DNA of 64,000 nt from Macrostomum lignano (taxonomy: Eukaryota): assembly GCA_002269645.1 (NCBI GenBank), contig NIVC01000633.1, positions 186,001 to 250,000 of the forward strand. The letters run 5' to 3'. Both the position numbers and the translations under genes were made by a program. Positions 6,561 through 53,900 of the stretch are shown one piece after another (the first letter of the stretch is position 1; the number at the start of each line of letters is the position of its first letter). The notes under the pieces are model-generated. The model searched no databases. It was given only the letters and a program-made list of their open reading frames with translations, and was not told where the DNA came from.

Positions 6561-6927
6561 GATATAATTAAAAGAATCTACGAAGGTAATTCGTAGAAAG
6601 CTACACGAAAGCTAACAGGTAAAACTTGTGTCCGATTATTGCTACGCACTAATCAGTGACGTCATCGGAAGAGTTTATTTTCGGTGCATTGGAGGGCAAA
6701 TTTGACGGAGAAGAATTGGCTGTCTCAGTTGCTGATTTAAATCTGGATTTTCGACTTTGCTACTGATAGTAGTTGGAGAGCGTCTGCGGTTATCGAAGGC
6801 ATTCAGAGTATTTGCGTTGAAAATAAAAAGCGCATTCAATATTCCGAGTGGCATTTAAAAATCTATAAAAGTACAAGCTGTCAGTAATTAAGGCCAGTAA
6901 TTAGCTGGGGTTCAGCGCGTCTCATCT

Positions 6928-9900
6928 TCACTGGCAGATTTTCCACTTGCCGCCGACTTTTACGCAGGCGCCGCCAGCGTTCGGGCAGCGAATGCCGAGC
7001 CGGGTGCACGGGTTGTCGGATGGCGCGGCGCAGCTGCCGCCGGAGCGCTTGAAGCCGGGCAGGCAGGCGCAGGTCTTGGCGCCCCAGACGCCTTCGCAGG
7101 ACTCGGTGGCCTTGTTGCAGCTGCAGGCCGGCGCCGGGTCCTTGCAGTCCGCGGCCGCCTTCACTCCGCTGGACGAGTACGTCACCTTCACGGACGTCGG
7201 GCTGTCGTCCATGGTCGAGTCGGCCGAGCTGGTGGGCATGTACACGTCCGACACGCGAAGGCCGGTGATGCAGCCTGGGGGGGGGGGCGATGGGACAGAT
7301 GAGCTGCAGTTTTGAGCACCGAAAGGATCCGGAACTGGAGGATGGGGAACTGGAGGATGGGGAACTGGAGGATGGGGAACTGGAGGATGGGGAACTGGAG
7401 GATAAGGAACTGGAGGATGGGGAACTGGAGGATGGGGAACTGGAGGATGGGGAACTGGAGGATGGGGAACTGGAGGATAAGGAACTGGAGGATAAGGAAC
7501 TGGAGGATGGGGAACTGGAGGATAAGGAACTGGAGGATGGGGAACTGGAGGATGGGGAACTGGAGGATAAGGAACTGGAGGATGGGGAACTGGAGGATGG
7601 GGAACTGGAGGATAAGGAACTGGAGGATGGGGAACTGGAGGATGGGGAACTGGAGGATGGGGAACTGGAGGATGGGGAACTGGAGGATGGGGAACTGGAG
7701 GATAAGAAACTGGAGGATGGGGAACTGGAGGATGGGGAACTGGAGGATGGGGAACTGGAGGATGGGGAACTGGAGGATGGGGAACTGGAGGATGGGGAAC
7801 TGGAGGATGGGGAACTGGAGGATGGGGAATTCGAGGATGGGGAACTGGAGGATGGGGAACTGGAGGATGGGGAACTGGAGGATGGGGAACTGGAGGATGG
7901 GGAACTGGAGGATGGGGAACTGGAGGATGGGGAAGAGGAGGATGGGGAACTGGAGGATGGGGAACTGGAGGATGGGGAATTCGAGGATGGGGAACTGGAG
8001 GATGGGGAACTGGAGGATGGGGAACTGGAGGATGGGGAACTGGAGGATGGGGAACTGGAGGATGGGGAATTCGAGGATGGGGAACTGGAGGATAAGAAAC
8101 TGGAGGATGGGGAACTGGAGGATGGGGAACTGGAGGATGGGGAACTGGAGGATGGGGAACTGGAGGATGGGGAACTGGAGGATGGGGAACTGGAGGATGG
8201 GGAACTGGAGGATGGGGAACTGGAGGATGGGGAACTGGAGGATGGGGAACTGGAGGATGGGGAAGAGGAGGATGGGGAACTGGAGGATGGGGAACTGGAG
8301 GATGGGGAATTCGAGGATGGGGAACTGGAGGATAGGGAACTGGAGGATGGGGAACTGGAGGATGGGGAACTGGAGGATGGGGAACTGGAGGATGGGGAAC
8401 TGGAGGATGGGGAAGAGGAGGATGGGGAACTGGAGGATGGGGAACTGGAGGATGGGGAATTCGAGGATGGGGAACTGGAGGATGGGGAACTGGAGGATGG
8501 GGAACTGGAGGATGGGGAAGAGGAGGATGGGGAACTGGAGGATGGGGAACTGGAGGATGGGGAAGAGGAGGATGGGGAACTGGAGGATGGGGAACTGGAG
8601 GATGGGGAATTCGAGGATGGGGAACTGGAGGATGGGGAACTGGAGGATGGGGAACTGGAGGATGGGGAAGAGGAGGATGGGGAACTGGAGGATGGGGAAC
8701 TGGAGGATGGGGAAGAGGAGGATGGGGAACTGGAGGATGGGGAACTGGAGGATGGGGAATTCGAGGATGGGGAACTGGAGGATGGGGAACTGGAGGATGG
8801 GGAACTGGAGGATGGGGAACTGGAGGATGGGGAACTGGAGGATGGGGAATTCGAGGATAGGGAACTGGAGGATGGGGAACTGGAGGATAGGGAACTGGAG
8901 GATGGGGAACTGGAGGATAGGGAACTGGAGGATGGGGAACTGGAGGATGGGGAACTGGAGGATGGGGAACTGGAGGATGGGGAACTGGAGGATGGGGAAC
9001 TGGAGGATGGGGAACTGGAGGATGGGGAACTGGAGGATGGGGAACTGGAGGATGGGGAACTGGAGGATGGGGAACTGGAGGATGGGGAACTGGAGGATGG
9101 GGAACTGGAGGATGTGGAATTGGGGGATGTGGAACTGGAGGATGGGGAACTGGAGGATGTGGAACTAGATGATGTGGAACTAAAGTTGGAAACTCGACAA
9201 GGAATTCGAGGATGGGGGATTTGAGGTTGGGGAACTGGAGGTTGGGGAAAAAGAGGATGGGGATTTTTGAGGATGGGGAATTTGAGGATGGGGAACTGGA
9301 GGTTGGGGAAATAGAGGATGGGGAACTGGAGAGTGTGGGAATTTGAGGATGGTGAATTTGAGGATGGGGAACTGGAGGTTGGGGAAATAGAGGATGGGGA
9401 ACTGGAGACTGTGGGAATTTGAGGATGGTGAATTTGAGGATGGGGAACTGGAGGTTGGGGAAATAGAGGATGGGGAACTGGAGAGTTTAAGAATTTGAGG
9501 ATGGGGAATTTGAGGATAGGGAATTTGAGGATGGGGAATTTGAGGATGGGGAACTGGAGAGTGTGGGAATTCGAGGATGGGGAATTCGAGGATGGGGAAT
9601 TCGAGGATGGGGAATTCGAGGATGCAGCTCTATTAAAATTAGATCAAGTTCGCAAGTACAGTTGGCCATGATTCAGCGACAAGCCTGCCAGGTGCTACTA
9701 AAAGACAAAGCCCTGGGGCGGGCCAAGCCACTCACTGCTGGGCAGATTCATGCTGACTTTGAAGGAGTTCACGAGAATCTCCTTGGGGAGCAGGTGCACC
9801 TGTGAGTATTCATCCACTGCAAGGAAGAGCTGCGACTTGGCCGTGGACACCAGGACCTCGTGCCAGTGGCCGTCGCTGACCACTTTGGGGATGAAGGGCC

Positions 9901-12900
9901 GGCAGCTCGAGTCGATGCAGAACTGCAGGGTCTCAGACTCCAGCTGCAGTTTGAGCGATTAACTTATTGCAGTGTGTGATATGTAGGGTGGGATATGCAG
10001 TGTGGGATATGCAGTGTGGGATATGCAGTGTGGGATATGCAGTGTGGGATATGCAGTGTGGGATATGCAGTGTGGGATATGCAGTGTGGGATATGCAGTG
10101 TGGGATATGCAGTGTGGGATATGCAGTGTGGGATATGCAGTGTGTGATATGCAGGTTGGGGTATGCAGTGTGGGATATGCAGTGTGGGATATGCAGTGTG
10201 TGATATGCAGTGTGGGATATGCAGTGTGGGATATGCAGGTTGGGATATGTAGTGTGGGATATGCAGTGTGGGATATGCAGTGTGGGATATGCAGTGTGGG
10301 ATATGCAGTGTGGGATATGCAGTGTAGGAAAACTATGATGTAGCAGTCTTGCCTTCAGCTCGAATCGGGTGGCTTCTGAGCCAGTGCTTTCAATCGTCAG
10401 CAGCTGAGTGGCGGTGGCAACTCTGGTGCGGAACCGGAGTCGCAGGCCCAGCGGCGAAGCGCTCCGCAGGGGGATGTTGGAGCCGCTGCTCAGCGTCCAG
10501 CTGATGCCGCTGTCGCTGGCGGCCGTGTTCAGGATAAGCAGCTCTGAGGGTGGCGGTGCGGCAGGCGGCTGGAAACTGGCACAAACAGTGGCATCAGGGG
10601 CACAAACGGGAACCAGAGACACCAGGGACATCAGGGACACCAAAGACACCAGGGAAATCAGGGACACCAGAGACATCAGGGACACCAGAAACATCAGGGA
10701 CACCAGAAACACCAGGGACATCAGGGACACCAGAGATACCAGGGACATCAGGGACACCATAGACACCAGGGACATATGGGACATCAGAGACATCAGGGAC
10801 ACCAGGGACACCAGGGACACCAGGGACACCAGAGACACCAGGGACATCAGGGATATCAATCAGCAGGGCTCCTGCTCACCCTTGCTGCAGGAGGCGGCGC
10901 ACATTGCGGGGTCGGTGATTTTCTCATTAGTCATCCTGGTCTGGCCGGAGCACCGGCACTGGCACAGATCCTTGCGGACGACCCCGAGGAAGCCGTAGCA
11001 CACGGACTTGTCGCCGCACAGGTAGCCGGTCTCCGAGCCGCCGCAAGAGGCGTCCTGCTGGCTGCATTTCTCGGAAGTTTTCGCAATCGGGCCCTTGTGG
11101 CCGTCCACCTTCAGGTCAACCAGCCGGTTGTTGAGCCGCACGTTGCGGAAGCAGCCATTAAAGGAGCCGCCGAGTAAGACAGTGGTGCTGCTGAGAGCGA
11201 AGTCACCGGACAAGGTGCTCTCGGCCGTCTGCTGGATGCACTCGGAGCCCGGCTCCACCGTGCAGAACACCGTGACAGTCTGGCAGCACCGGGGGAATTG
11301 ATCCGGTGTATCCAATTATAGCTGATTTATTTATTTTAACAGGGCCCAGCTCGAGAGTGCCCAACTCGAGATAGATAGGAGTGTCCAACTCGAGATAGAT
11401 AGGAGTGTCCAACTCGAGATAGATAGGAGTGTCCAACTCGAGATAGATAGGAGTGCCCAACTCGAGATAGATAGGAGTGCCCAACTCGAGATAGATAGGA
11501 GTGCCCAACTCGAGATGGATAGGAGTGCCCAACTCGAGATGGATAGGAGTGCCCAACTCGAGATGGATAGGAGTGCCCAACTCGAGATAGATAGGAGTGC
11601 CCAACTCGAGATGGATAGGAGTGCCCAACTCGAGATAGATAGGAGTGCCCAACTCGAGATAGATAGGAGTGCCCAACTCGAGATAGATAGGAGTGCCCAA
11701 CTCGAGATAGATAGGAGTGCCCAACTCGAGATGGATAGGAGTGCCCAACTCGAGATAGATAGGAGTGCCCAACTCGAGATGGATAGGAGTGCCCAACTCG
11801 AGATAGATAGGAGTGCCCAACTCGAGATAGATAGGAGTGCCCAACTCGAGATAGATAGGAGTGCCCAACTCGAGATAGATAGGAGTGCCCAACTCGAGAT
11901 AGATAGGAGTGCCCAACTTCCTAGCAGCAAGAGATTCTCCACAAAGAAACCCGGTGGAACTCACGGTGAGTTTGCTGCCGCTCAGCTTGGCCACAATGGT
12001 GACATCCATCCAGAGCCCCTGCTGCACGAATCTGTTGGAGTGCAGCGCGGTCTGGGTGAACTCGGGCTCCATGCTAGGCACGGTGGCGGTGGTGTACAGC
12101 GGTTCGGGCACTCGGCCTAGCTGGACATTGACCAGATCTTTGGACTTGGACACCAGAGTGACAATGGTACACAGGTTCCCGTCCGGATTCATGCACCTGC
12201 CGGCGAACTTGAATTTCAGCGTCAGCATGTCCGGCCGGCCGGCTCTGTTCGGCACCAGGTGATGGGTTGTGATGGCGTCGCTGCCGGTGCCGCCGTTGTA
12301 GCCGCGGGTCAGCAGCTCGCAGTTGGGTCCGCGGACCTCGTTCTTGACTTCGGAGGAGGAGCACTCGCAGCTGCGGGACAGCGGGAGGGGCGCAGGCTCG
12401 GAGCTCCTGAATTTGCCTCCCGAATCCTTTGGTTTCTTGGAATTCGCACAGCCCGAATTCAATTCAGAAACTGTCTCCACAAAACGATTTTAAGGAATAA
12501 ACGCTAAAAATTCGATGTCTTAGAATCCACCCCTCAAATTCAATTTCTTAGAATCCACCCCTCAAACTCTATTTCTTAGAATCCACATCTCAAATTCGAT
12601 TTCTTAGAATCCACCCCTCAAACTCTATTTCTTAGAATCCACATCTCAAATTCGATTTCTTAGAATCCACCCCTCAAACTCTATTTCTTAGAATCCACCC
12701 CTCAAACTCTATTTCTTAGAATCCAAATCTCAAATTCGATTTCTTAGAATCCACATCTCAAATTCGATTTCTTAGAATCCACATCTCAAATTCTATTTCT
12801 TAGAATCCACATCTCAAATTCGATTTCTTAGAATCCACATATCAAATTCTATTTCTTAGAATCCACATCTCAAATTCGATTTCTTAGAATCCACATCTCA

Positions 12901-14989
12901 AATTCGATTTCTTAGAATCCACATCTCAAATTCGATTTCTTAGAATCCACATCTCAAATTCGATTTCTTAGAATCCACATCTTAAATTCTATTTCTTAGA
13001 ACCCACGTCTCATATTCGATTTCTTAGAACCCACGTCTCATATTCGATTTCTTAGAACCCACGTCTCATATTCGATTTCTTAGAACCTACATCTCATATT
13101 CGATTTCTTAGAACCCACGTCTCAAATTATGTTTCTCAGAATGTACACGACAAAATCAATTTTTAAGAATCCACCCCTCAAATTTGATTGCTTAGAATCC
13201 CTTTTCTTCAAATGTGATTTCTTAGAACTTCCTCCCGAACTCGATTTCCCAGGACGTGGAGCCACTCACGGGCCGTAGCTTGGCACATCAAAGCTGGTCT
13301 TGCATTTTCCCGGAGCAGCGCAGGTCTTGGAATTACAGGACCCCTGCAGGTCCTTAAAGGCGTCCTTGCCGCACCGCGTTTCCCACTTGGTCGGCATGCC
13401 CAGGACAGCCTTGTCGTCCGCACTCTTGACGCTGCCAAGCTCCGTGAAGCCCTTGGAAGAGTCGTGCACCAGCACCGATCTGCAGAATGTCTTGCACGTT
13501 GAGTAGCAGTCCTTCTCGCCATCGACTGCGACTCCTACTTCCTGTGTGCGTGGGGAAGACGGTGTCAGCGAGAGCCGCTGTCCCACCTGATCCTTCAACG
13601 AGAGCCGCTCTCCCACCTGATCTTTCAGGGGGAGCTGCTGTCCCACCTGATCCTTCAGCGAGAGCAGCTGTCCCACCTGATCCTTCAGCGAGAGCAGCTG
13701 TCCCACCTGATCCTTCAGCGAGAGCAGCTGTCCCACCTGATCCTTCAGCGAGAGCAGCTGTCCCACCTGATCCTTCAGCGAGAGCAGCTGTCCCACCTGA
13801 TCCTTCAGCGAGAGCAGCTGTCCCACCTGATCCTTCAGCGAGAGCAGCTGTCCCACCTGATCCTTCAGCGAGAGCCGCTGTCCCACCTGATCCTTCAGCG
13901 GGAGCCGCTGTCCCACTTAATCCTTCAGCGGGAGCCGCTGTCCCACCGCAGTGAGTTGCAGGAGAGAAACTGGGGACTTCTTCAAGTTTATGTTGATAAA
14001 ATACTTCCGATTTTTCGATTTTTCTAAAACTTGCATTGGAGACTTATGGGGCACCCAAAAGTGTATCCACTAGATTTTAATCTAATAGCACATGTGCTAG
14101 AACTTCATTAAGCCAATTAAAGATAAATAATAATATCTACAAATTAATATGCAATTGTCTTTTACGTTGGCTGATAATAGTTTTTCAATTTAGTTATAAT
14201 GCATAGACAGTGTAATGTCACTGTTCGCTTTTTTTAAAAACTGTCACGACCGGCTCAATGTTTGCACTGTGGTCTTTTCACTGCACCCAGGCAAAGCAAT
14301 GTTCGCAACCTTAAAGCATTTCGCTCCTCAAAACCAATTACTGTACAAGGCTAGATTACTAATTCTATTGTATTAAGGAAGTAACAGCACTTGATTTCGG
14401 TAAGCAAATTCATTTAGATAAAGTTTTAGAATTCAACCAACTTCTGACATAATTATGTTGACTCTTTGGTGGATTCTCTCTTTTCTCGTGTCGTGGAGTT
14501 ACAACCTCTCCCCCCTATTAGAATTGGAATTTGTCAGCACAATCTTGAATAGGTCTCCATGCCTCTATTCAAGTTTATGTTGATAAAATCAATCCCCATG
14601 AAGAATCTCCCCACCCTAAAACCCCTATTCCCCATGCCCCGGTGGTTGGTTTTAAGCTACATATAATTGGGTTAAAGCTACCTAAAAATGGAGCTCAAAT
14701 TTGAAATCAGCACCATCAAAAACCCCTTTAGAGACAAAATTATGATCCTATCAAAATTGAAACTATTTTATCAACATAAACTTGAAGAAGTCCGAATTTT
14801 CAATATGCTACTACAAGTAACAAACCGAGCACATGGCTTACCTTTGCATTGTTCCTGATGATCGTATCAGCCTTGTCTTTGGGAATCAGGTTGCCCGAGC
14901 CGTCGTATAGCAAGATGCCGGTGCCGCCGGAGCCGCCGGAGCCGCCGGTGCCGCCGGTGCCGCCGGAGCCGCCGGAGCCGCCGGAGCCA

Positions 14990-15024
<35 letters not shown>

Positions 15025-16663
15025 ACCGGAGCCGCCCGCATTGCTGGAAGCAACCGTGGCCGTGTAACCGGAATCCTTAAGCTTTTTCAGGAGATCCTTG
15101 ACCTTGTCGCCTTCACCTGCAGGAGCGTAAAACAGCCTTATAAAATTTTATGAACGTCTGAAAATCAAAAATATTCTACTGGCCAAATCAATTCGTACCA
15201 TTGACAACAACCGTCTGGGGAAGGTCTGTGGGGTTGACCTTGTTGACATTGATGGTGCCCTTGAGGATGACGATTTTACCGTCGGGGCCCTTGCCGATGA
15301 CCGTGAAGGGCACGTCGCAGTTGGGCAGGGCGCCTCGGTAGGCCAGCTTGTTTTTCGGCGAGCTGGACTCGTCAGCGAGCAGCAGGTGCGGCAGCGGCGA
15401 GGTGATGCTGAGTATCTCGGTCACGGAGGGGAATGTGATGTAGCCGAACCCGTCCTTGAAATTGGCGTCTGTCGGATCGAATTTCCGGCATTCTTTGATG
15501 AATTCAAGTGGCTTCGGTTTGGTTGAATTTGAGCATTTTTAACTGTAAGGCTAACATGTAGTTATGGTATGAGAAATTTGAGTTTTTCTAATTTATTTCA
15601 CTGCTTCGAGCTCCTATCATGAAGTTTCAACTAGAGAATCGTGCTATTGAAAGATTTCCCAGTCAAAACTGTACTGCATGCTTAAACCACTCTCAGTTAA
15701 AGTCCAAATCTGATGGGAATTACATGTCCATACTGATCTTACCGACTATTGTTGGGAAGTACTTGTTAGTCTGAATGAGTGCTCAACAGTGTTTATCAGT
15801 TCTAATCAGTGTTCATCAATGCTCAGCAATGTTCATCAGTTCTAATCAGTGTTCATCAATGCTCATCAGTGCTCATCAATGTTTATCACTGCTCATCACT
15901 GCTCATCACTGCTCATCAATGCTCATCACTGCTCATCAATGCTCATCAGTGCTCATCAGTGCTCATCAAAGTTCATCAGTGCTCATCAGTGCTCATCAAT
16001 ATTCATCAGTGCTCATCAATGTTCATCAGTGCTCATCAGTGCTCATCAATGTTCATCAGTGCTCATCAGTGCTCATCAAAGTTCATCAGTGCTCATCAGT
16101 GCTCATCAATATTCATCAGTGCTCATCAATGTTCATCAGTGCTCATCAGTGCTCATCAGCATTCATCAGTGCTCATCAGTGCTCATCAGTGCTCATCAAT
16201 GTTCATCAGCATTCATCAGTGCTCATCAGCATTCATCAGTGCTCATCAGCATTCATCAGTGCTCATCAGTGCTCATCAGCATTCATCAGTGCTCATCAGT
16301 GCTCATCAGTGCTCATCAATGTTCATCAGCATTCATCAGTGCTCATCAGTGCTCATCAATGTTCATCAGCATTCATTAGTGCTCATCAGCATTCATCTGT
16401 GCTCATCAATATTCATCAGCATTCATCTGTGCTCATCAGTGTTCCGCAATACAGAAGTTGCTGGATCAGCTGTTTTGATTGAATGGACATCATATAGCTC
16501 ACCTGCACAACTCATCCGAGCTCGTACATGTAGGATCAGTAGATAATCCAACAAACTCACCGGCGGGGCCGTTAACGTTCACAGAAAAGTCAGCGCCAAC
16601 AAGAGCCACCGCAGTCGCAGCCAACAGAAGTCTGGCCAGAGTGCAGCGCCGATCTCCCAGCAT
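6928..16663 (-). CDS. Putative secreted 823-aa protein resembling the membrane-proximal ectodomain of a non-chordate classical cadherin: signal peptide, degenerate cadherin-like repeat, NC-like region with (GGS/T)13 insert, EGF, LamG, EGF, LamG, EGF-like. Exons: 16663-16561, 15468-15199, 15116-14842, 13541-13270, 12370-11965, 11279-10880, 10543-10353, 9943-9736, 7274-6928
   Basis: All 8 junctions are phase-consistent (2472 nt = 824 codons); 7 are GT-AG and 1 is GC-AG. N-terminus MLGDRRCTLARLLLAATAVALVGA is signal-peptide-like. LamG motifs LLGGSFNGCFRNVRLN, VSDGHWHEV and SCITGFRV; EGF Cys spacing CEC...GPNCE and CACLPGF...SC. AATAAA on the minus strand at ~6676-6681. Family assignment is from memory of motifs, not a database search. 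Confidence 0.8.
7325..9622. repeat. 15-bp minisatellite (GAACTGGAGGATGGG), ~150 copies, filling intron 8 of the LamG/EGF gene
   Basis: Direct reading; homogeneous core with a degenerate right edge. Confidence 0.97.
9967..10325. repeat. 14-bp minisatellite (GCAGTGTGGGATAT), intron 7
   Basis: Direct reading. Confidence 0.95.
10612..10856. repeat. 9-bp-based repeat (CAGGGACAC/CAGGGACAT), intron 6
   Basis: Direct reading. Confidence 0.9.
11345..11918. repeat. 24-bp minisatellite (GAGTGCCCAACTCGAGATAGATAG), intron 5
   Basis: Direct reading. Confidence 0.96.
12515..13200. repeat. 28-bp minisatellite (CTTAGAATCCACATCTCAAATTCGATTT), intron 4
   Basis: Direct reading. Confidence 0.95.
13568..13947. 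repeat. 30-bp minisatellite (CTGTCCCACCTGATCCTTCAGCGAGAGCAG), intron 3
   Basis: Direct reading. Confidence 0.96.
13974..14793. mobile_element. MITE-like non-autonomous element with ~30-bp TIRs (GGACTTCTTCAAGTTTATGTTGATAAAATA)
   Basis: 13974-14003 is the reverse complement of 14764-14793; a third partial TIR copy lies at ~14568-14589. No TSD identified and no coding capacity. Confidence 0.7.
15773..16442 (+). repeat. 10-bp satellite (GCTCATCAGT and variants), intron 1
   Basis: Direct reading. Confidence 0.95.
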
Positions 16664-17204
16664 GTCTTCCCGACGGACTCACTGCAGTTATTATTCGCCG
16701 AAAATTTATTCTCTATACTCAGATTTCTGACTATTAAACTGTCAACATGAAGCGGGCAGAGTTGCACAGATAACAAGTGAAGTCTCCAGTGACCGGGCTG
16801 ACCGCTGCGATATGCATTTGCAGTATCTCTCGCTGACGGTACAGGCAGGCGTCTTGGCCACAGACTGCTGCTGCGGGGCTGCTACCATAGACAGTTCAGA
16901 ACTGCTGCCCTAAGATAGCCGAGCTGAATAAAAGTGCATGGGGATCTACGTGTGTAAATTTATCGCTTTTATAGCTCTCTCGGCCATATTTAACTCGCCG
17001 GCTCTCGATGTACTTGTACTTTAGTCTGCCATGCCGATTTACATGATTGTTATTGACACGAGATTGCCACACCAAATTAACCATTGAAAGCAGCGCTTTT
17101 ATTGTTGCAGCTTTGGCTTTAAGTTTCTTAAACAATTTGTACGAATAGCACAGTATAAACACAAAAGACAAAATAACAAAAAGAACTGATGCACATGAAT
17201 TTAA

Positions 17205-21506: not shown

Positions 21507-23693
21507 TCAGGCGGCAGCGGACAGGTCGCAGCAGTGGACGGTGCTGCCGGAGTCGGCCACGAACACGCGGTCAGGCCGGGTGCCGCAGAGGGCGTTCACC
21601 TTGTCGCTGTGGGCGAAGGACGCGCCGGCCTGCTCGGAGTCCAGCGCCCACAAATAGCAGCGCCGGTCGTTGCCGCCGGACAGCAGCAGGTGGCCGGGCA
21701 GGCACAGCAGGGCGCTGACACCGGCCGAGTGTCCGTAGAGGCTCTCAGACTGCAGCAGGTGGCGGCCGGAGCCGCTGAACAATTCCACGGAGCCGTTCTC
21801 CAGGCCGGCTGCCACGAACTGCCCGTCGGAGCTGGCGGCCAGGCAGTGCACCAGCGGCGGGTTCACGCCGATGCCGCTGGCTGACACCGTCGACTCGGCG
21901 TCCTGCAGCTCGCTCATGTCGAATATGTTGACGGCCTCGCCGCGGTGGCTCTTCCAGTCGGTGACAACCAGGCGATAGTCCATGCCGCCTGAGATCACCT
22001 GCGGGAGGGGGACGGCGTGTGAAATGCTGAGATCCCCGGGGTGTTGATGTTGATCCCGCTGAGATACCAGGGATGTTGATGTTGATCCCGCTGAGATCTC
22101 CGTGATCTTGATATTGATCCCGCAGAGATCCCAGGGATGTTGACATTGATCCCGCAGAGATCCCAGGGATGTTGACATTGATCCCGCTGAGATCCCAATA
22201 AAGTGAAGTGAAACAAAGGTGGCTGAAATCCCGGGCCCAAACGACTCACCTGCCAGGTGCGGGTTGGCCGGAAGATCACAGCCGATGCGATGTTGTCGTG
22301 CTTGTGCAGGACGCGCACCAGCTCGCCGCTGACGGCGTCGAAGATTTTCACGGCGCCGGTGTCGTCAGCCGTGGCCAGCCGCCGCTCCTCCTCCAGCAGG
22401 GCCACCGAGTTCACCTCGTCTTCGGCTGCGCAGATGGACAGCAGCGGCTGTGCCGGGCTGCGCAGGTCCCAGGCGTGCACCGCGCTGCCCTGCAGGCAGG
22501 GAGAGGACACGGGCGCGGTGTGGGATCACTCCATAGTGTGGGATCACCCCATAGTGTGGGATCACCCCATAGTGTGGGATCACTCCATAGTGTGGGATCA
22601 CTCCATAGTGTGGGATCACCCCATAGTGTGGGATCACTCCATAGAGTGGGATTACTCCATAGTGTGGGATCACCCCATAGAGTGGGATCACCCTATAGTG
22701 TGGGATCACTTTATAGTGTGGGATCACCCTATAGTGTGGGATCACCCTATAGTGTGGGATCACTTTATAGTGTGGGATCACCTATAGTGTGGAATCACTT
22801 TATAGTGTGGGATCACTATAATGTGGGATCACTTTATAGTGTGGCATCACTTTATAGTGTGGCATCACTTTATAGTGTGGCATCACTTTATAGTGTGGGA
22901 TCACTTTATAGTGTGGCATCACCCTATAGTGTGGGATCACCCTATAGTGTGGGATCACTCCATAGAGTGGGATCACATCATAGAGTGGGATCACTCCATA
23001 GTGTGGGATCACCCCATAGTGTGGGATCACCCATAGTGTGGGATCACTCCATAGAGTGGGATCACATCATAGAGTGGGATCACTCCATAGTGTGGGATCA
23101 CCCCATAGTGTGGGATCACTCCATAGTGTGGGATCACCCCATAGTGTGGGATCACTTCATAGTGTGGGATCACTCCATAGTGTGGGATCACATCATAGTG
23201 TGGGATAACCCCATAGTGTGGGATCACCTATAGTGTGGGATAACCCCATAGTGTGGGATCACCTATAGTGTGGGATTACCTATAGTGTGGGATCACCCCA
23301 TAGTGTGGGATCACCTATAGTGTGGGATCACTTCATAGTGTGGGATCACTCCATAGTGTGGGATCACATCATAGTGTGGGATAACCCCATAGTGTGGGAT
23401 CACCTATAGTGTGGGATCACCCCATAGTGGTGGGATCACCCCAGTACCTGAGCGGCAAACAGCAGCCGACCGGAGGCAAAGCCGGGCGATGAGAACGCCA
23501 GCGATACAACGGGAGCGCCGGCGGGGCCGCCGCACTGCCACTTGGCAGTCAGGAGGCGCTGGCCGGCGTCCCATAAGCAGATGGCGGCGTCGTCGGCCCC
23601 GGAGGCCAGCAGGCTGGAGTCGTGGTCCAGCGCCAGGCAGTTCACGGATGCGGAGTGGCCGTTGGCCAGAGCGGATGATGCAGAGGTGGCCAT
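21507..23693 (-). CDS. WDR53: WD repeat protein 53 (325 aa); exons 23693-23448, 22489-22250, 21998-21507
   Basis: All junctions phase 0, GT-AG. Motifs GHSASVNCL, EDEVNSVAL..RLATADDTGAVKIFD, HDNIASAVIFRP, GVNPPLVH, GHSAGVS..LLSGGND and HSDKVNAL match WDR53 as I recall it. Confidence 0.88.
22030..22197. repeat. ~32-bp degenerate repeat (GAGATCCCAGGGATGTTGACATTGATCCCGCA), WDR53 intron 2
   Basis: Direct reading. Confidence 0.85.
22518..23430. repeat. 18-bp minisatellite (GTGTGGGATCACTCCATA), WDR53 intron 1
   Basis: Direct reading. Confidence 0.95.
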
Positions 23694-28101: not shown

Positions 28102-28472
28102 CCATGGGGTGCTTAAAGCACTAGTTAATGCTAATTTTGGCCTTTGTAATAAATTTTTGTTTATTGGAAATTTTATTATTAACCAAATGTTTAGTGGCAA
28201 AAAAAGACATTAGTAGGAGTTTTATTTATATTTTTTTCAAAATTGGCACATTTCAAAATTAGTAGATTTTATTTTATTAAAATAATAGTTTATTTGTTTA
28301 TTTAATAGTTTATTTAATAGTTCCCTTGCCACTATTAGGGATATGAACCATTGCTATCATTATATAGGATTCAATTGTAGTTAGAAGTCATTTCTCAGTC
28401 AATCAACAAAACTTGCTGCAGCCTCAGCAGCCAGGCTGCCTGCCCACAGCTCTCCAGTGCCCCTAGCCAGAA

Positions 28473-29033
28473 ATGCCAGTCTTCATAGTCATGGGCCCAT
28501 CTGGCTGTGGCAAGACCTCAATAGCTGCAGCCATGGCCAGCCACTTTGGTCTGCCATACGCCGAGGCAGACGAATTTCACAGCGAGGCCAACCAGTCGAA
28601 GATGAGGCGCGGCGAGCCGCTGACAGATGCAGATCGGCTGCCCTGGCTGCTGGAGCTGCACAGGCGGGTGGCTGATTGGCTGGCTGCTGGCCAGGATGCT
28701 GTGATTACCTGCTCGGCATTGAAGCGCTCCTACCGACGCCTGCTGATGACGGGCCGCAGCGATGAGGCGTCGGCAGTGTCAACAGACGCTGATGCCTCTG
28801 CTGTGCTGTTCATTCACCTGGCCGTGCCGCGGGAGACTCTGCTGGCCCGGGTGGCGGCCAGGCGGGGCCATTTCTTCCCTGCTGGCCTGGTGGAGTCGCA
28901 GCTGGCCTGTCTGGAGCCGCCAGACCCGGCCGAGGAGCCAGCGGTGCTGGTTGACGCTGACAGGCCCGAGCCTGCCGTGCTGCAGGCTGTGATTGGCGCC
29001 GTGGCTCAGAGGCTGCAGCCGCACCGGTTTTAG
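28473..29033 (+). CDS. IDNK: Gluconokinase (GntK/IdnK family), 186 aa, intronless
   Basis: P-loop VMGPSGCGKT, EADEFH..N..KMRRGEPLTDADRLPWL, CSALKRSYR, HFFPAGLVESQLACLEPP. Confidence 0.95.
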   Translation: MPVFIVMGPSGCGKTSIAAAMASHFGLPYAEADEFHSEANQSKMRRGEPLTDADRLPWLLELHRRVADWLAAGQDAVITCSALKRSYRRLLMTGRSDEASAVSTDADASAVLFIHLAVPRETLLARVAARRGHFFPAGLVESQLACLEPPDPAEEPAVLVDADRPEPAVLQAVIGAVAQRLQPHRF

Positions 29034-33415: not shown

Positions 33416-34944
33416 GACAGACACTAATACAGACACTGACAGACAGACAGACAGACGACAGACACTATGACGGATTAAGACAGACACTAAGACATCACTG
33501 AGACTCTAATACAAACACCATGACAGACAGACAGACACTAAGACAGACCCTGTCCCCCCAACCCCCCAGGTACTTCGTCGACCACCCGTCCCGCTATGGG
33601 CTGCCGTCCCAGACGGTTTTTCTGGACAGCGGGCGGGGGGCGCGGCTGCACTGCTACTTCATCAAGCAGCCGGGCGACTCTACCCGCCTGCCCACGCTGC
33701 TCTTCCTGCACGGCAACGCGGGCAACATCGGGCACCGCCTGCCCAACGCGGCGCTGCTGTTCCACCAGTGCCGGGTGAATCTCTTCCTGCTGGAGTACCG
33801 AGGCTACGGCATCAGCACCGGGGCTCCCTCCGAGACCGGCCTGTACGCCGACGCCGCCGCAGCGCTGCAGCACCTGAGCCGGCGCTCCGACATCGACCCG
33901 CAGCGCGTGCTGCTGTTTGGCCGGTCCCTCGGTGGCGCGGTGGCCATCGAGCTTGCAGCCCGGCCGGAGACCGCCGCCCTGCTCAGCGGCCTGGTGCTGG
34001 AGAACACCTTCACCAGCCTGCCCGAGGCCGCCAGCGTGCTGTTCAGGCTGCCGCTGCTCAGCTCCCTGCCCGGCCTGGTCATGACCAACAGGTAAGCCTT
34101 GTCCCTACAGATCCCATCTACAGATCCATCCCTACAGATCCCATCCCTACAGATCCTATCCCTACAATCCCATCTCTACAGATCCATCCCTACAGATCCC
34201 ATCCCTACAGATCCTATCCCTACAATCCCATCTCTACAGATCCCATCCCTACAATCCCATCTCTACAGATCCCATCCCTACAGATCCCATCTCTACAGAT
34301 CCCATCCCTACAGATCCCATCTCTACAGATCTTATCCCTACAGATCCTATCTCTACAGATCTTATCCCTACAGATCCCATCCCAACCGATCCCATCTCAA
34401 CAAATCCATCTCAACAGATCCCATCTCAACAATCTCATCCCTACAGATCCCATCCCAACAAATTCCGTCCTAAAAAATCGCACCGAAACACCCACCAGGT
34501 TGAAATATCCCACTCCTACTTGTGCTACATCTAGAGCTCAATCAACTCCCCATCCTCAGGTTCAACTCCCGTGCCAAAATGCCGTCTGTCCGCGTGCCGA
34601 CGCTGTTCATCAGCGGGCTGCGGGACACCCTGATCCCGCCCGCCATGTCCGCCTGCCTGCACAGCCTCTGCGGCTCCGGCGTCCGCCGCCTGGAGACCTT
34701 CGAGTCCGGGGAGCACAACACCACCTGGCAGTGCGCCGGCTACTTCCAGCGCCTCGCCGGCTTCCTGCACTTCGCCTCCGAGATGGCGCCGCAGCGCGAG
34801 GACTGGCACGCCGGCCAGCACTCCGAGGACGAGGAGGACCAGTCGGCGGGCGCCGCTGCCGCTGCCGCCTCAGCCACCTCCGCTGCTGGCGGAGCTTCCG
34901 CCGGAACCGCCGCAGATGACATTCCGACAATTACTGTGCTGTGA
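32374..34944 (+). CDS. ABHD13: Alpha/beta hydrolase domain-containing protein 13 (up to 475 aa); exons 32374-32894, 33570-34091, 34560-34944; the true start codon may be downstream (e.g. ATG at 32641)
   Basis: LFLHGNAGNIGHRLPNA, LEYRGYG, nucleophile elbow FGRSLGGAVA, ENTFTS, LFISGLRDTLIPP, GEHNTTWQC; N-terminal TM segment; phase-2 GT-AG junctions. Confidence 0.93.
32898..33548. repeat. (GACA)n compound microsatellite making up almost all of ABHD13 intron 1
   Basis: Direct reading. Confidence 0.95.
34105..34460. repeat. 15-bp minisatellite (TACAGATCCCATCCC), ABHD13 intron 2
   Basis: Direct reading. Confidence 0.9.
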
Positions 34945-49712: not shown

Positions 49713-50918
49713 AGTCGTAAAAGTTTTTTTTGTGCGTTCAATTAAAGCAAGTAAATTACTTGCCTACTTGGTAAATTTTTGAGTGGACTCTGTGTTGTCG
49801 GCTTGTCGCCAGGATCAGAAAAGTATCATTGTTTCTTTGAAAACAAAAATTTAAAAAAACCTCGAAACTAACAAACTTGTGACGTGAAAATTAACTAAGA
49901 AGAAATAGTGAATATAAATATTATTTTCATGTTTTTATGTACTTTTGTTTTTATTAGCATATTGTATTTTTTCTTTTTAGTATCGTTAGCATTTCGCTTG
50001 CCTACTTGACTTGACTTCAAAATATTTTTTATTAAATCCATATGCGGCGACTGCGCACGTACATCTACGACTACGACCCTTCCTTTTTACATGCTAGTAT
50101 TATTTAAGTGCAATTAATTTTTTCGAATGTTGATGAAATAACTTGCGACTAGTATAATCTTCAAATCTTGTAAAATTTATAACTTAGGCAGACATCTATA
50201 CCCTTGCCCTTGTCATTTATTAAGTAAATACTGCATTTGAAAATCTTGAATCATCTGAGGCTTCAGCCTCTAGACTTCAGTCTACCCCTAAATTAATATT
50301 GTGTCTAGGCTTGTCTTTGATATTTTTGCCTAAGATATGTTCGAAGCATAAGTGTTTTGTCTAATGTTTTTAGTGAGAATTACCTTTTTCTTACTTTATA
50401 TATAACATATTGAGCTAAAATTATCTTCGTTTTTTCGTTTTTATCTTATGTTATGTCTAACTTAGTTTATCTTTGTTCTTACTTTTGTCATAACCATTTG
50501 AATTTTATTTAAATTTGTAATTTTTTATTATTATTTTGTTTGTTTTCAAGTTCATATGCAAGTCTAATAAGAGATTTTGTACTTGCTTAGTTTTTTTAAA
50601 GTTCTAGGATTTTTAGTTTTCAATGCTCTAGTTCTTCTTAAGTTTGTTTTTTGTCTAGCACAAAAATTCAGGGGTTTCATTTAATTAAAGCAGTTTTATG
50701 AATACAAGCAACAAGATACTATAAAAATCAAGATTATTTAAGGAAAATTTTAAGTTTATGAAGACCATTGTTCTGCTACTGCTTTTTAAAAACAATGTAG
50801 ACTAATTTTTTTATTTAGAAACTTTCATCAATTGCTTATCTGTTTATAGAATCTGTACACTAATTTACTAACAATCAGCCAAATTGATTAAAAATGATCA
50901 TCCTCGCCTATTCCTCTT

Positions 50919-53900
50919 ATGCCCGATTTGCGCCCATCCTCCCAGGCCTCTGGTGGCAGCGCTAGTGGGCGCCCCAGCAGCCGCCGAAGTCGCCGGAGCA
51001 GCGCTGGCAGTGGCGGCTCGGCCATCTCAACGGACCGAGCCAGCTCTGGGCCAGACGATGCCCAGTCCCGCGTGTTCCTGGCGCTCAAGCAGCGAGGCGA
51101 CGTCGAGCAGCTAAAGGCGCACCTTCGCAAGCGCCTATTTGAAGCCATTCAACAGCAGCAGCAGCTGCCCAAGCAGCAGCTGCCGCGCGAGATGGACGAC
51201 ATCGACAGGGCGGCGGCGACGCTGGTGGCAGAGCACCTGCGCACTGCCGGCTTCCCCTACAGCCTGTCGGTGTTCGTGCCGGAGTCAGGGCTCAGCAGCG
51301 GCGGCCTGCTGGACCGCAACAGCCTGCAGGAGCTGCTGCGCCTGCCGGCGGACGGCGGTTTTCACAGGCGGCTGGTGGCCGCGCCCGATGGTGCCAGCGT
51401 GCTGCGGACGGTGCTGCAGCATCTGGCCGAAGCTGGCGGCGGCGCCGGCGGGGTGAACGCCGGCGTGCAGACGGCGGAGTCGCACCCGGCCGAAGCGCTG
51501 CTGGCGGCCCGCATGGCGGCCATCGACAGCCAGTTCGACCAGCGCGCCAGGCAGCAGAAGCGCCAGCCGGAGTCGTCGGCCGCCTCGGTGGAGGCGGCGC
51601 TGCTGCAGTGCCGGCGGGAGACGGAGGAGCGGATGCGGAAGCAGCTGCAGGCCGACATGCAGCGATTCCGCGAAGGCGAGCTGGCGAAGGTGCGACTGGA
51701 GGAGCGGGTGGCGATGCAGAAGGAGCTGGAGGCCCGGCGCCGGGAGATGGAGGCCGAGTACCGCCTGAGATTCACCCGGCTGGTGGACCGCGAAGGCAGC
51801 TGCGACGATGCGCTGGCCCGGCAGCTGAAGGTACGGCGGGCTCTGCGCTTGCAGTTGCTGCGGTTGCTTGCTGTCCACCTGATCCTTCAGTGATCTGTTC
51901 CAATCATTCAGTGATCCAATTTATTTTTTTCAGTGACCCATTTGAATCTTTCAGTGACCGATTTGAATCTTTTAGTGATTCATTTAGATCTTTCTGTGAC
52001 ACACTTTGATTTTTTCAGTGACCCTCCAAAGACCTTCAGTGATCCTTATTAAGTTATCCTCTCAGATTTCCAGAGATCCCTCAGATGCTAAAGGTTGAGA
52101 ACACGTACTGTGGCTGATATTGTTGCAATTTTGCCGCATTTCCTTCTAGGAGCAAGAGCGGGAGTGCTACCTGCGGCGGCAGACCCTGCTGGAGCAAATC
52201 GACTTAGCCAAGGAGCGGGAGAACCAGCTGCGGCGCGACCGGGAGGCCTGGGAAAGGTTTGCTGCCGCACGGATCCTTTCTTCCCCGATCCCAGTTCATG
52301 CCCTCTTTTATACTCGCTGACGTCCCGTAATCCCCAGTGGTATCCCCTGATCCCCAGTGATGTCCCCTGATCCCCAGTGATGTCCCCTGATCCCCAGTGA
52401 TGTCCCCTGATCCCCAGTGATGTCCCCTGATCCTCAGTGATGTCCCCTGATCCCCAGTGATGTCCCCTGATCCTCAGTGATGTCCCCTGATCCTCAGTGA
52501 TGTCCCCTGATCCCCAGTGATGTCCCCTGATCCTCAGTGATGTCCCCTGATCCTCAGTGATGTCCCCTGATCCCCAGTGATGTCCCCTGATCCTCAGTGA
52601 TGTCCCCTGATCCTCAGTGATGTCCCCTGATCCCCAGTGATGTCCCCTGATCCTCAGTGATGTCCCCTGATCCTCAGTGATGTCCCCTGATCCTCAGTGA
52701 TGTCCCCTGATCCTCAGTGATGTCCCCTGATCCTTAGTGATGTCCCTGATCCCCAGTGACACTAAAGTGCAAATCCTTAATCAATGCTTTGACTCACCTG
52801 CCAATTAACAGAGAGCAGACGGTGCGGCAGGAGCAGCTCCGAGCCCTGGATCAGTCCCTGGTGGACCGCGAGACCAAACTGAAAGCCAGCGAGCTGTCGC
52901 TGGAGACTCGGCTGAAGGACGAGGTGGCCAAGTGAGCCGAGGCGTGCGCTGCGGGAGCTCAGAAAACGAGACAGATATAATGGACTAGATATGGGAGGGA
53001 TAGATATGGGAGAGAGTGGATAGCTATGGGAGAGAGTGGATAGATATGGGAGGGATAGATATGGGAGAGAGTGGATAGATATGGGAGAGAGTGGATAGAT
53101 ATGGGAGAGAGTGGATAGATATGGGAGGGGATAGATATGGGAGAGAGTGGATAGCTATGGGAGAGAGTGGATAGATATGGGAGAGAGTGGATAGATATGG
53201 GAGAGTGGATAGATATGGGAGAGAGTGGATAGATATGGGAGAGTGGATAGCTATGGGAGAGTGGATAGCTATGGGAGAGAGTGGATAGATATGGGAGGGA
53301 TAGATAAGAGAGAGAGAGTGGATAGATATGGGAGAGTGGATAGATATGGGAGGGAGTGGATAGATATGGGAGAGAGTGGATAGCTATGGGAGAGAGTGGA
53401 TAGATATGGGAGAGAGATGGATAGATGTGGATAGATATGAGAGAGTGGATAGATATGGAGAGAGTGGATAGATATGAGAGACAGTGGGTAGATATGGGAG
53501 AGAGTGGATAGATATGAGAGAGAGTGGGTAGATATGGGAGAGTGGATAGATATGGGAGGGAGTGGATAGATATGGGAGAGAGTGGATAGCTATGGGAGAG
53601 AGTGGATAGATATGGGAGAGAGTGGATAGATGTGAGAGAGAGTGGATAGATATGAGAGAGAGTGGATAGATATGAGAGACAGTGGGTAGATATGGGAGAG
53701 AGTGGATAGATATGAGAGAGAGTGGGTAGATATGGGAGAGAGTGGATTGATATAGGAGAGAGTGGATAGATATGGGAGAGAGTGGATAGCTATGGGAGAG
53801 AGTGGATAGATATGGGAGAGAGTGGATAGATATGGGAGAGAGTGGATAGATATGGGAGAGAGTGGATAGATATGAGAGAGAGTGGATAGATATGAGAGAC

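What the first reader, a model, noticed from the sequence alone, without database searches (positions are those of the whole stretch)
6928..16663. Apparently secreted, membrane-proximal-only classical-cadherin derivative hidden across nine satellite-separated exons
Seen: nine phase-consistent exons give an 823-aa protein with a signal peptide, two LamG and several EGF-like modules, a stop at 6928 and a downstream AATAAA, but no hydrophobic TM segment or catenin-binding tail. Known: non-chordate (type III/IV) classical cadherins have EC repeats, then NC, EGF, LamG, EGF, LamG, EGF, TM and a cytoplasmic tail. DCYSTCKTFCRSVL...AVLGM...TRC and CEC...GPNCELLTRGYNGG match my memory of the NC/CE1-LG1 Cys pattern. 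Inference: this is a cadherin that lost most EC repeats and its membrane anchor and became a secreted matrix, mucus, adhesive or decoy protein. The last EGF stops after ICQ, so a further 3' exon via a CA|GTGAAG donor cannot be fully excluded; I found no suitable exon by eye.
Basis: partly seen in the sequence, partly recalled or inferred. Interest (0 to 1): 0.7.

Follow-up and report, generated by a model that had tools for sequence, protein, structure and literature searches.

The report
Secreted flatworm protein resembling cadherin stalk
This is a real, intact nine-exon gene from a Macrostomum-type flatworm that encodes a secreted protein resembling the membrane-near stalk of large cadherins (CELSR, Fat, non-chordate classical) without the adhesive cadherin repeats; it is an unusual lineage-restricted family, but a specifically classical-cadherin origin is not shown.

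Summary
Nine phase-consistent minus-strand exons (16663 to 6928) give exactly 823 aa, with a signal peptide, no other hydrophobic segment, and two laminin-G (LG) folds separated by Cys-rich EGF-like modules. The stop is TGA at 6930-6928 and an AATAAA lies 249 nt downstream. Seven of the eight introns carry their own minisatellite.

Only three relatives exist among 1.84 billion representative proteins, two named Macrostomum lignano and one from an unnamed sample:
- A 797-aa apparent transcript stops at the same residue (…VCQ-TAG).
- A 29%-identical M. lignano paralogue continues into a transmembrane (TM) helix and a 25-aa tail within one exon.
- The third is a mis-predicted, fused model of a near-identical copy.

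So secretion by truncation is well supported.

The cadherin idea is partly supported. The LG/EGF similarity, however, is generic: neurexin scores as well. The specific signal lies at the junction of the MAD/NC-like domain and the first EGF, and it is shared at least as strongly with mouse CELSR1 (E 2.9e-11). No family member has Ca2+-binding cadherin repeats or a catenin-binding tail.

Verdict: an EC-less offshoot of the cadherin-superfamily juxtamembrane cassette. A "classical" origin is unproven. Function was not tested.

The parts
16561..16663 (-). Exon 1: ATG at 16663 and signal peptide (aa 1-24, MLGDRRCTLARLLLAATAVALVGA), then the start of the mature protein (DFSVNVNGPA). The donor is CG|GTGAGT, phase 1.
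   Evidence: An in-frame TGA lies 15 nt upstream of the ATG. Both homologues start the same way.
15199..15468 (-). Exon 2: most of the N-terminal seven-strand beta-sandwich domain (EC/Ig-like fold prediction). An alternative acceptor at 15492 would add 8 aa.
14842..15116 (-). [quoted passage not shown] An in-frame 9-nt microsatellite (14917-15036) encodes a 39-aa Gly-Ser/Thr run in the loop between strands 2 and 3. The run is absent from both homologues.
13270..13541 (-). Exon 4: the Cys motif DC-x3-C-x3-C-RSVLVHDSS…G…W…C (equivalent to the end of cadherin NC and to CELSR EGF1), followed by the first four Cys of the first canonical EGF (CE1).
11965..12370 (-). Exon 5: the end of CE1 (…GPNCELLTRGYNG) and the first two thirds of LG1.
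10880..11279 (-). Exon 6: the end of LG1 (…GCFRNVRLNNRLVDLK) and the Cys-rich CE2 module (9 Cys).
10353..10543 (-). Exon 7: the first part of LG2. It ends at a GC-AG intron (AAG|GCAAGA).
   Evidence: P0002 contains the segment that a GT-only gene model (P0001) skips.
9736..9943 (-). Exon 8: the core of LG2 (…VVSDGHWHEVLVSTAKSQLFLAVDE…).
   Evidence: Pfam Laminin_G_2; PDB laminin alpha2 LG4-5.
6928..7274 (-). Exon 9: the end of LG2, a linker, one full EGF (…CEGVWGAKTCACLPGF…) and a final EGF cut after its fourth Cys (…KWKICQ). The stop TGA is at 6930-6928.
6674..6679 (-). AATAAA, 249 nt downstream of the stop; a likely polyadenylation signal.
   Evidence: The pattern alone is weak evidence (91 copies in the window).

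Best explanation
The locus is an intact, previously mis-annotated gene of a Macrostomum-type flatworm. It encodes a secreted extracellular protein of about 800 aa.

The layout, after the signal peptide, is:
- an Ig/EC-like beta-sandwich;
- a ferredoxin-like (MAD/FBox/NC-like) domain;
- an EGF-like module with a long insert;
- an EGF, then LG1, then a Cys-rich module, then LG2;
- an EGF and a final truncated EGF.

The gene belongs to a small family so far seen only in M. lignano and one unnamed sample. The family is best read as a highly diverged offshoot of the juxtamembrane cassette of the large cadherins (CELSR/Flamingo, Fat, type III classical cadherin) that no longer carries a Ca2+-binding cadherin repeat array.

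An older membrane-anchored form survives as a paralogue with a TM helix and a 25-aa tail. The form in the window became soluble through a stop codon inside the last exon, after the fourth Cys of the last EGF. Two disulfide pairs can still form, but the rest of that EGF, the TM helix and the tail are gone.

Shown: the gene structure, the signal peptide, the absence of a TM segment, the conserved stop, the two LG folds, and the homology to the MAD-EGF-LG region.

Inferred: that it acts outside the cell as an LG/EGF ligand or matrix component, possibly competing with its anchored paralogue. Which partners it binds is unknown.
For: - Gene model and phases.
- Signal peptide is the only hydrophobic segment.
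- Only three relatives among 1.84 billion representatives, two named M. lignano and one from an unnamed sample.
- P0002 is an uninterrupted 797-aa ORF on a 2.7-kb assembled contig. It ends at the same residue with a different stop codon (CAG TAG).
- P0003 (M. lignano PAA54150.1) aligns end to end and adds a TM helix and short tail. Its last exon runs from the end of LG2 through the tail without an intron.
- No remnant of that tail lies downstream in the window.
- LG folds.
- Colinear profile-profile match to the type III cadherin stalk, probability 99.2%, E 1e-19, 527 columns. Reversed-sequence controls score about 20.
- LG1, LG2 and CE3 each score best against their positional counterpart.
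- The NC-end plus CE1 sub-profile hits all four cadherins at the right place. In the whole PDB, only CELSR1 matches upstream of the EGF (KCVSVLRFDSS… against FCRSVLVHDSS…).
- Family profile against CELSR1 residues 880-1450: E 2.9e-11, starting inside the FBox/MAD domain.
[quoted passage not shown] Its top Foldseek hits are dystroglycan, PCDH15 EC9-MAD12 and CDH23 EC25-MAD28.
- The literature places MAD/FBox between the last EC and the EGF/LamG domains in Fat and CELSR: bioRxiv 10.1101/460097 and PMC12038025.
Against: - No RNA evidence from this species was available.
- The Foldseek hits for the N-terminal unit are weak (E 2.5e-3 to 2e-2; none at or below 1e-3), and the model rests on a three-sequence alignment.
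- The N-terminal 160 residues have no detectable sequence similarity to cadherin EC17/NC.
- phmmer with residues 217-823 found no cadherin at E 0.001 or better in the 1.84-billion library.
- The LG/EGF part is no closer to cadherins than to neurexin or laminin.
- Crumbs, Fat, and flatworm cadherins could not be tested.
Confidence: 0.6

Rival explanations
1. One reading: the family descends from a type III classical cadherin that lost its EC array and catenin-binding tail. The window gene additionally lost the TM helix.
For: - The module count and order equal type III exactly: NC-like, EGF-with-insert, one EGF, LG1, CE2, LG2, two EGFs, then a TM about 20 residues later in P0003 (PMC5473995).
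- CELSR1, by contrast, has three EGFs before LamG1, and EGF5-8, HormR and GAIN after LamG2 (PMC12038025).
- LG1, LG2 and CE3 each score best against their positional counterpart.
- The shared CE3 motif C-x-x-x-W-x4-C-x-C-x-x-GF is present.
Against: - No cadherin repeat or Cadherin_C signal appears in any member.
- The TM paralogue's tail is 25 basic residues.
- The similarity to mouse CELSR1 across MAD to LG1 is higher than to any of the four arthropod type III cadherins.
- EGF numbers change easily in evolution.
Confidence: 0.25
2. It is a generic LamG/EGF extracellular protein (Crumbs-, neurexin-, agrin- or laminin-like lineage) with no cadherin ancestry. The cadherin resemblance comes from shared EGF and LG modules plus chance.
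For: - The best PDB sequence matches are laminin alpha2 LG4-5 (32 bits) and neurexin.
- A neurexin LG-EGF-LG fragment scores as well as cadherin fragments against the family profile.
- The cadherin stalk profile strongly prefers neurexin and CELSR1 over this family.
- The short-tailed single-pass paralogue is reminiscent of Crumbs (my own knowledge, not tested).
Against: - The region upstream of the first canonical EGF matches only cadherin-superfamily proteins in my tests.
- The CELSR1 alignment runs into the FBox/MAD domain.
- The N-terminal fold prediction retrieves EC-MAD pairs.
Confidence: 0.3
3. The protein is really membrane-anchored: CA|GTGAAG at the stop acts as a donor to an unseen downstream TM exon, possibly as an alternative isoform.
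For: - The donor-like site overlaps the stop.
- The public model P0001 of a near-identical M. lignano copy uses this site and runs on downstream.
Against: - P0001's continuation is a frame-shifted fusion with no TM helix.
- The orthologue ends at the same residue with CAG|TAGCTC, which is not a good donor.
- The TM paralogue has no intron at this point.
- tblastn of its tail finds nothing in the window.
- The only non-repeat hydrophobic ORFs downstream (5299-5243, 1552-1496 and 1454-1368) are short, AT-rich and lack the missing Cys pair.
Confidence: 0.07

Closest known systems
CELSR/Flamingo ectodomain segment CADH9-FBox(MAD)-EGF1-3-LamG1-EGF4-LamG2 (mouse CELSR1, PDB 8vy2)
   Same: - Both have a ferredoxin-like domain followed directly by an EGF-like module carrying C…C-x-SVL-x-x-DSS, then EGF and LamG.
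- hhalign gives E 2.9e-11 over 303 columns, starting inside FBox.
- CELSR1 is the only PDB protein that matches upstream of the first EGF.
   Different: - This protein has no cadherin repeats, HormR, GAIN or 7TM.
- It has two rather than three EGFs before LG1 and only two after LG2.
- It is secreted.
Type III (non-chordate) classical cadherin membrane-proximal region NC-CE1-LG1-CE2-LG2-CE3 (e.g. DN-cadherin; Mma1, Sm1, Sm2, Ea2 of PMC5473995)
   Same: - The module order and number are identical.
- The alignment is colinear over 527 columns, E 1e-19.
- The NC-end/CE1 motif lies at the same place.
- In the paralogue P0003 the TM follows CE3 directly.
   Different: - There are no Ca2+-binding EC repeats.
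- There is no catenin-binding cytoplasmic domain in any family member.
- Sequence similarity is weak (8-40 bits by HMMER) and no better than to neurexin in the LG parts.
EC-MAD and cadherin-like-SEA juxtamembrane pairs (PCDH15 EC11-MAD12, CDH23 EC27-MAD28, dystroglycan)
   Same: [quoted passage not shown]
   Different: - The hits are weak (E 2.5e-3 to 2e-2).
- There is no sequence similarity.
- In this protein the pair sits at the N-terminus of a secreted protein, not next to a membrane.
Neurexin / laminin alpha LG-EGF-LG units
   Same: - The LG folds are the same, with an EGF spacer between them.
- These give the best PDB sequence and fold matches for LG2 and for the LG pair.
   Different: Those proteins have no MAD-like domain and no EGF1-type motif. 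The overall architectures differ.

Membership tests
Classical cadherin (type III/IV) | Tandem extracellular cadherin repeats with Ca2+-binding motifs (DxD, DRE, DxNDNxP) | tested here: not met
   No Pfam Cadherin hit at E up to 1. None is found in P0002 or P0003 at E 0.01 or better. There is no sequence similarity of residues 1-165 (mature numbering) to cadherin EC17/NC. By eye I saw no such motif. Only one beta-sandwich is predicted.
Classical cadherin (type III/IV) | Single-pass TM followed by a catenin-binding cytoplasmic domain | tested here: not met
   The window protein has no TM segment. The TM paralogue P0003 has a 25-aa basic tail with no Cadherin_C hit.
Classical cadherin (type III/IV) | NC-CE1-LG1-CE2-LG2-CE3 membrane-proximal complex | tested here: inconclusive
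   The colinear hhalign match (E 1e-19) and the positional preference of LG1, LG2 and CE3 support it. However, the LG/EGF similarity is generic, and the NC part matches only from its second half, and better to CELSR1.
MAD-bearing atypical cadherins (CELSR, Fat) | Ferredoxin-like MAD/FBox domain placed between the last EC and the EGF/LamG modules | tested here: inconclusive
   [quoted passage not shown] The Foldseek hits to EC-MAD pairs are weak. Model confidence is moderate, from a three-sequence alignment.
MAD-bearing atypical cadherins (CELSR, Fat) | Long EC array; for CELSR also HormR, GAIN and 7TM | tested here: not met
   The ORF starts with a signal peptide directly before the single beta-sandwich. 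The protein ends after the last EGF.
Laminin-G (LNS) domain proteins | LG beta-sandwich fold | tested here: met
   Pfam Laminin_G_2, E 2.8e-10. The family profile against laminin alpha2 LG4-5 gives E 3.7e-7. Foldseek against LG pairs gives E 1e-12.
Secreted protein | N-terminal signal peptide, no TM segment, no GPI-type hydrophobic C-terminus | tested here: met
   Hydropathy scan. The C-terminus …VKVGGKWKICQ is polar. The same holds in the orthologue P0002. No dedicated signal-peptide predictor was available.

The most novel reading that the evidence does not exclude
A flatworm lineage detached the non-adhesive stalk (MAD/NC-EGF-LG cassette) of a classical-type cadherin from its cadherin repeats and from catenin signalling. 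It kept that stalk as an independent gene family and then made a soluble version. This would show that the long-puzzling membrane-proximal complex of non-chordate cadherins is an autonomous functional unit with its own ligands. The secreted form could act as a diffusible competitor or matrix partner of that complex.
Probability: 0.15. Interest if true: 0.7.

Novelty: new variant of a known kind. Interest (0 to 1): 0.45.

Why it matters
The role of the NC/EGF/LamG stalk of non-chordate classical cadherins, and of the equivalent FBox-EGF-LamG block of Flamingo and Fat, is poorly understood.

A family that keeps only this block, in both anchored and secreted forms, would give a natural experiment for what the block does without cadherin repeats or catenins. 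M. lignano is tractable by RNAi and in situ hybridisation.

On a practical level, the locus is mis-annotated in public data: the only public model I found of this kind of locus (that of a near-identical copy) is truncated, frame-shifted and fused. It also shows how minisatellite-filled introns and a GC-AG intron defeat gene predictors in this genome.

Tried and rejected
- The first homologue search with the whole protein returned nothing, because the Gly-Ser run swamped the word index.
- The profile search with the trimmed family alignment returned only P0002, so no deeper alignment could be built.
- My first exon 2 (acceptor at 15542) and exon 7 (acceptor at 10568) were out of phase or hit a stop, and I replaced them.
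- The 831-aa variant (acceptor at 15492) was set aside because it inserts 8 residues that both homologues lack.
- Exact look-ups of the 823- and 831-aa models found no public record.
- The whole-protein AlphaFold model was poor (pLDDT 49) and returned only LG hits.
- hhalign of the N-terminal beta and MAD-like parts against cadherin EC17/NC gave nothing.
- Literature searches for the run accession and for the paralogue's locus tag gave no papers.
- The OCR'd alignment in supplement 8 of PMC5473995 was too corrupted to use. I used the clean FASTA supplement instead.
- P0001's downstream extension was examined and rejected as a fused, frame-shifted prediction.


Full report
**What is in the sequence**

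On the minus strand between 16663 and 6928 there are nine open segments with canonical splice sites. My first attempt used the best-looking acceptors and failed in two places. The acceptor at 15542 is followed by an in-frame TAA, and the one at 10568 is in the wrong phase.

The phase-consistent model is:
- Exon 1: 16663-16561
- Exon 2: 15468-15199
- Exon 3: 15116-14842
- Exon 4: 13541-13270
- Exon 5: 12370-11965
- Exon 6: 11279-10880
- Exon 7: 10543-10353
- Exon 8: 9943-9736
- Exon 9: 7274-6928

One intron is GC-AG (AAG|GCAAGA). The segment it keeps is present in the homologue P0002, whereas the public GT-only gene model P0001 skips it.

A second possible acceptor for exon 2, at 15492, would give 831 aa. 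The alignment with both homologues is ungapped only with 15468.

An in-frame TGA 15 nt upstream of the ATG, together with the equivalent starts of both homologues, rules out hidden upstream cadherin-repeat exons.

Seven of the eight introns are each filled by a different minisatellite, and 47% of the window is tandem repeat.

**Secretion**

The only strongly hydrophobic stretch is the N-terminal signal peptide, and the C-terminus is polar.

Searching 1.84 billion representative proteins with residues 217-823 found just three relatives:
- **P0002** is a 797-aa uninterrupted ORF on a 2.7-kb assembled contig (SRR30276812, most likely a transcript). It is 45% identical over the full length. It ends at the same residue, …KWQVCQ followed by TAG and about 196 nt of non-coding sequence.
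- **P0003** is M. lignano PAA54150.1. It is 29% identical and aligns from signal peptide to last EGF. It then completes that EGF (…ECICPPGVTMC) and continues into a TM helix and a 25-residue basic tail.
- **P0001** is a truncated, frame-shifted and fused public model of a copy that is about 95% identical in exons 7 and 8. This places the window in Macrostomum.

In the M. lignano genome the last exon of P0003 runs from the end of LG2 through the tail without an intron. The CA|GTGAAG 'donor' that overlaps the stop in the window is therefore probably coincidental.

tblastn with the P0003 tail finds nothing in the window. The only non-repeat hydrophobic ORFs downstream are short and unrelated. AATAAA lies 249 nt after the stop.

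I conclude that the soluble form is genuine and old, being conserved at 45% identity. It arose by a stop within the last exon that removes the last Cys pair of the final EGF, the TM helix and the tail.

**What kind of protein it is**

Pfam sees only Laminin_G_2 in the second LG. The family profile matches laminin alpha2 LG4-5 and, weakly, neurexin and CELSR1 in the PDB. The AlphaFold model is poor overall (pLDDT 49) but clearly contains two LG sandwiches.

To test the cadherin idea with real sequences, I took four arthropod type III cadherins (Mma1, Sm1, Sm2, Ea2) from the supplement of PMC5473995.

- **The motif is real.** For example, Mma1 reads ECLIENLNCESSCTNVLMVD…SFVGV…KCTCG…GPQCQQTTRSFNG, against the window's DCYSTCKTFCRSVLVHD…AVLGM…TRCG…GPNCELLTRGYNG.
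- **The profiles align colinearly.** Profile-profile comparison gives one colinear alignment of 527 columns from the end of NC to CE3 (probability 99.2%, E 1e-19).
- **The score is not a composition artefact.** Reversed-sequence controls score about 20, against 145-162 for the real alignment.
- **Modules prefer their positional partners.** LG1, LG2 and CE3 each score best against their positional counterpart.

**Controls that temper this**

The type III stalk profile scores neurexin-1alpha at 269 bits and CELSR1 at 210 bits, but this family at only 20-40 bits. A neurexin LG-EGF-LG fragment scores as well against the family profile as the same region of the cadherins does. The LG/EGF similarity is therefore generic.

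The specific signal lies upstream of the first canonical EGF:
- A sub-profile of that region hits all four cadherins at the right position (16-21 bits).
- Across the whole PDB, only CELSR1 matches upstream of the EGF (KCVSVLRFDSSAPF against FCRSVLVHDSSKGF).
- The cadherin profile itself aligns EC17-NC-NCend-CE1 with CELSR1 CADH9-FBox-EGF1-EGF2. So NC equals the FBox/MAD domain, and the motif equals CELSR EGF1.
- The family profile aligns to CELSR1 residues 880-1450 with E 2.9e-11 over 303 columns. The alignment starts in the second half of FBox. This is better than to any single arthropod cadherin (scores 42-72 against 92).

[quoted passage not shown] Its top Foldseek hits are dystroglycan, PCDH15 EC9-MAD12 and CDH23 EC25-MAD28, but they are weak (E 2.5e-3 to 2e-2).

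The literature places exactly such a MAD/FBox domain between the last cadherin repeat and the EGF/LamG modules of Fat and CELSR (10.1101/460097, PMC12038025).

**Interpretation**

The best reading is a Macrostomum-restricted family that keeps the juxtamembrane cassette of the large cadherins but has no Ca2+-binding repeat array and no catenin-binding tail. It exists in anchored and secreted versions, and the window holds the secreted one.

The sequence signal is at least as strong to CELSR1.

It fails the defining tests for membership of the classical cadherins, so I do not file it there.

Function is inferred only from the domain types: an extracellular LG/EGF ligand or matrix component, perhaps competing with its anchored paralogue.

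**Novelty and score**

Neither gene model is present in a 15-billion-protein collection, and no paper mentions the family. I rate it a new variant of a known kind, of moderate interest (0.45). It is attractive for cadherin-evolution specialists if the ancestry is confirmed, but it rests on weak and partly generic similarity and on no expression data.

Noticed in passing
window 6928-16663 (protein); L001: The 823-aa secreted protein and its 797-aa orthologue P0002 contain no N-x-S/T glycosylation sequon. About 6 are expected from composition in each (P about 0.002 each). The membrane-anchored paralogue P0003 has two. This is unexplained; it may reflect selection against N-glycans.
   Followed up: partly
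window 14917-15036: An in-frame 9-nt microsatellite (GCCGGAGCC, about 13 copies) inside exon 3 encodes a 39-aa Gly-Ser/Thr run. It sits in a predicted loop of the MAD-like domain and is absent from both homologues. It also swamped the word-indexed protein search.
   Followed up: partly
window 7331-16441, and the whole window: Seven of the gene's eight introns each hold a different minisatellite (periods 9-30 nt, up to 2.3 kb), and 47% of the 64-kb window is tandem repeat. The repeats are intron- and intergenic-specific and differ from each other.
   Followed up: no
window 56004-58796 (+): A single 931-aa ORF carries a gag-type aspartic protease, reverse transcriptase, RNase H and a truncated integrase. 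It is an LTR (Ty3-like) retrotransposon copy.
   Followed up: partly
window 21510-22364 (-), 28467-29030 (+), 33502-34941 (+), 50898-51890 (+): Exon-sized ORFs of neighbouring genes: a WD40 repeat protein, a P-loop kinase (AAA_33/SKI-like), an alpha/beta hydrolase, and a LisH/FOP-dimer centrosomal-type protein.
   Followed up: no
L002 22358-25370 (M. lignano NIVC01002960.1): A tandem paralogue of the anchored family member P0003 lies about 7 kb downstream of it on the same strand (50-97% identity by exon). The family is therefore locally duplicated in M. lignano.
   Followed up: partly
window 16664-16685: An AG (ctgcag|TGAGTCC) lies 17 nt upstream of the ATG and is followed at once by an in-frame TGA. 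It could be a spliced-leader trans-splice acceptor, as is common in Macrostomum (my own knowledge; not tested).
   Followed up: no
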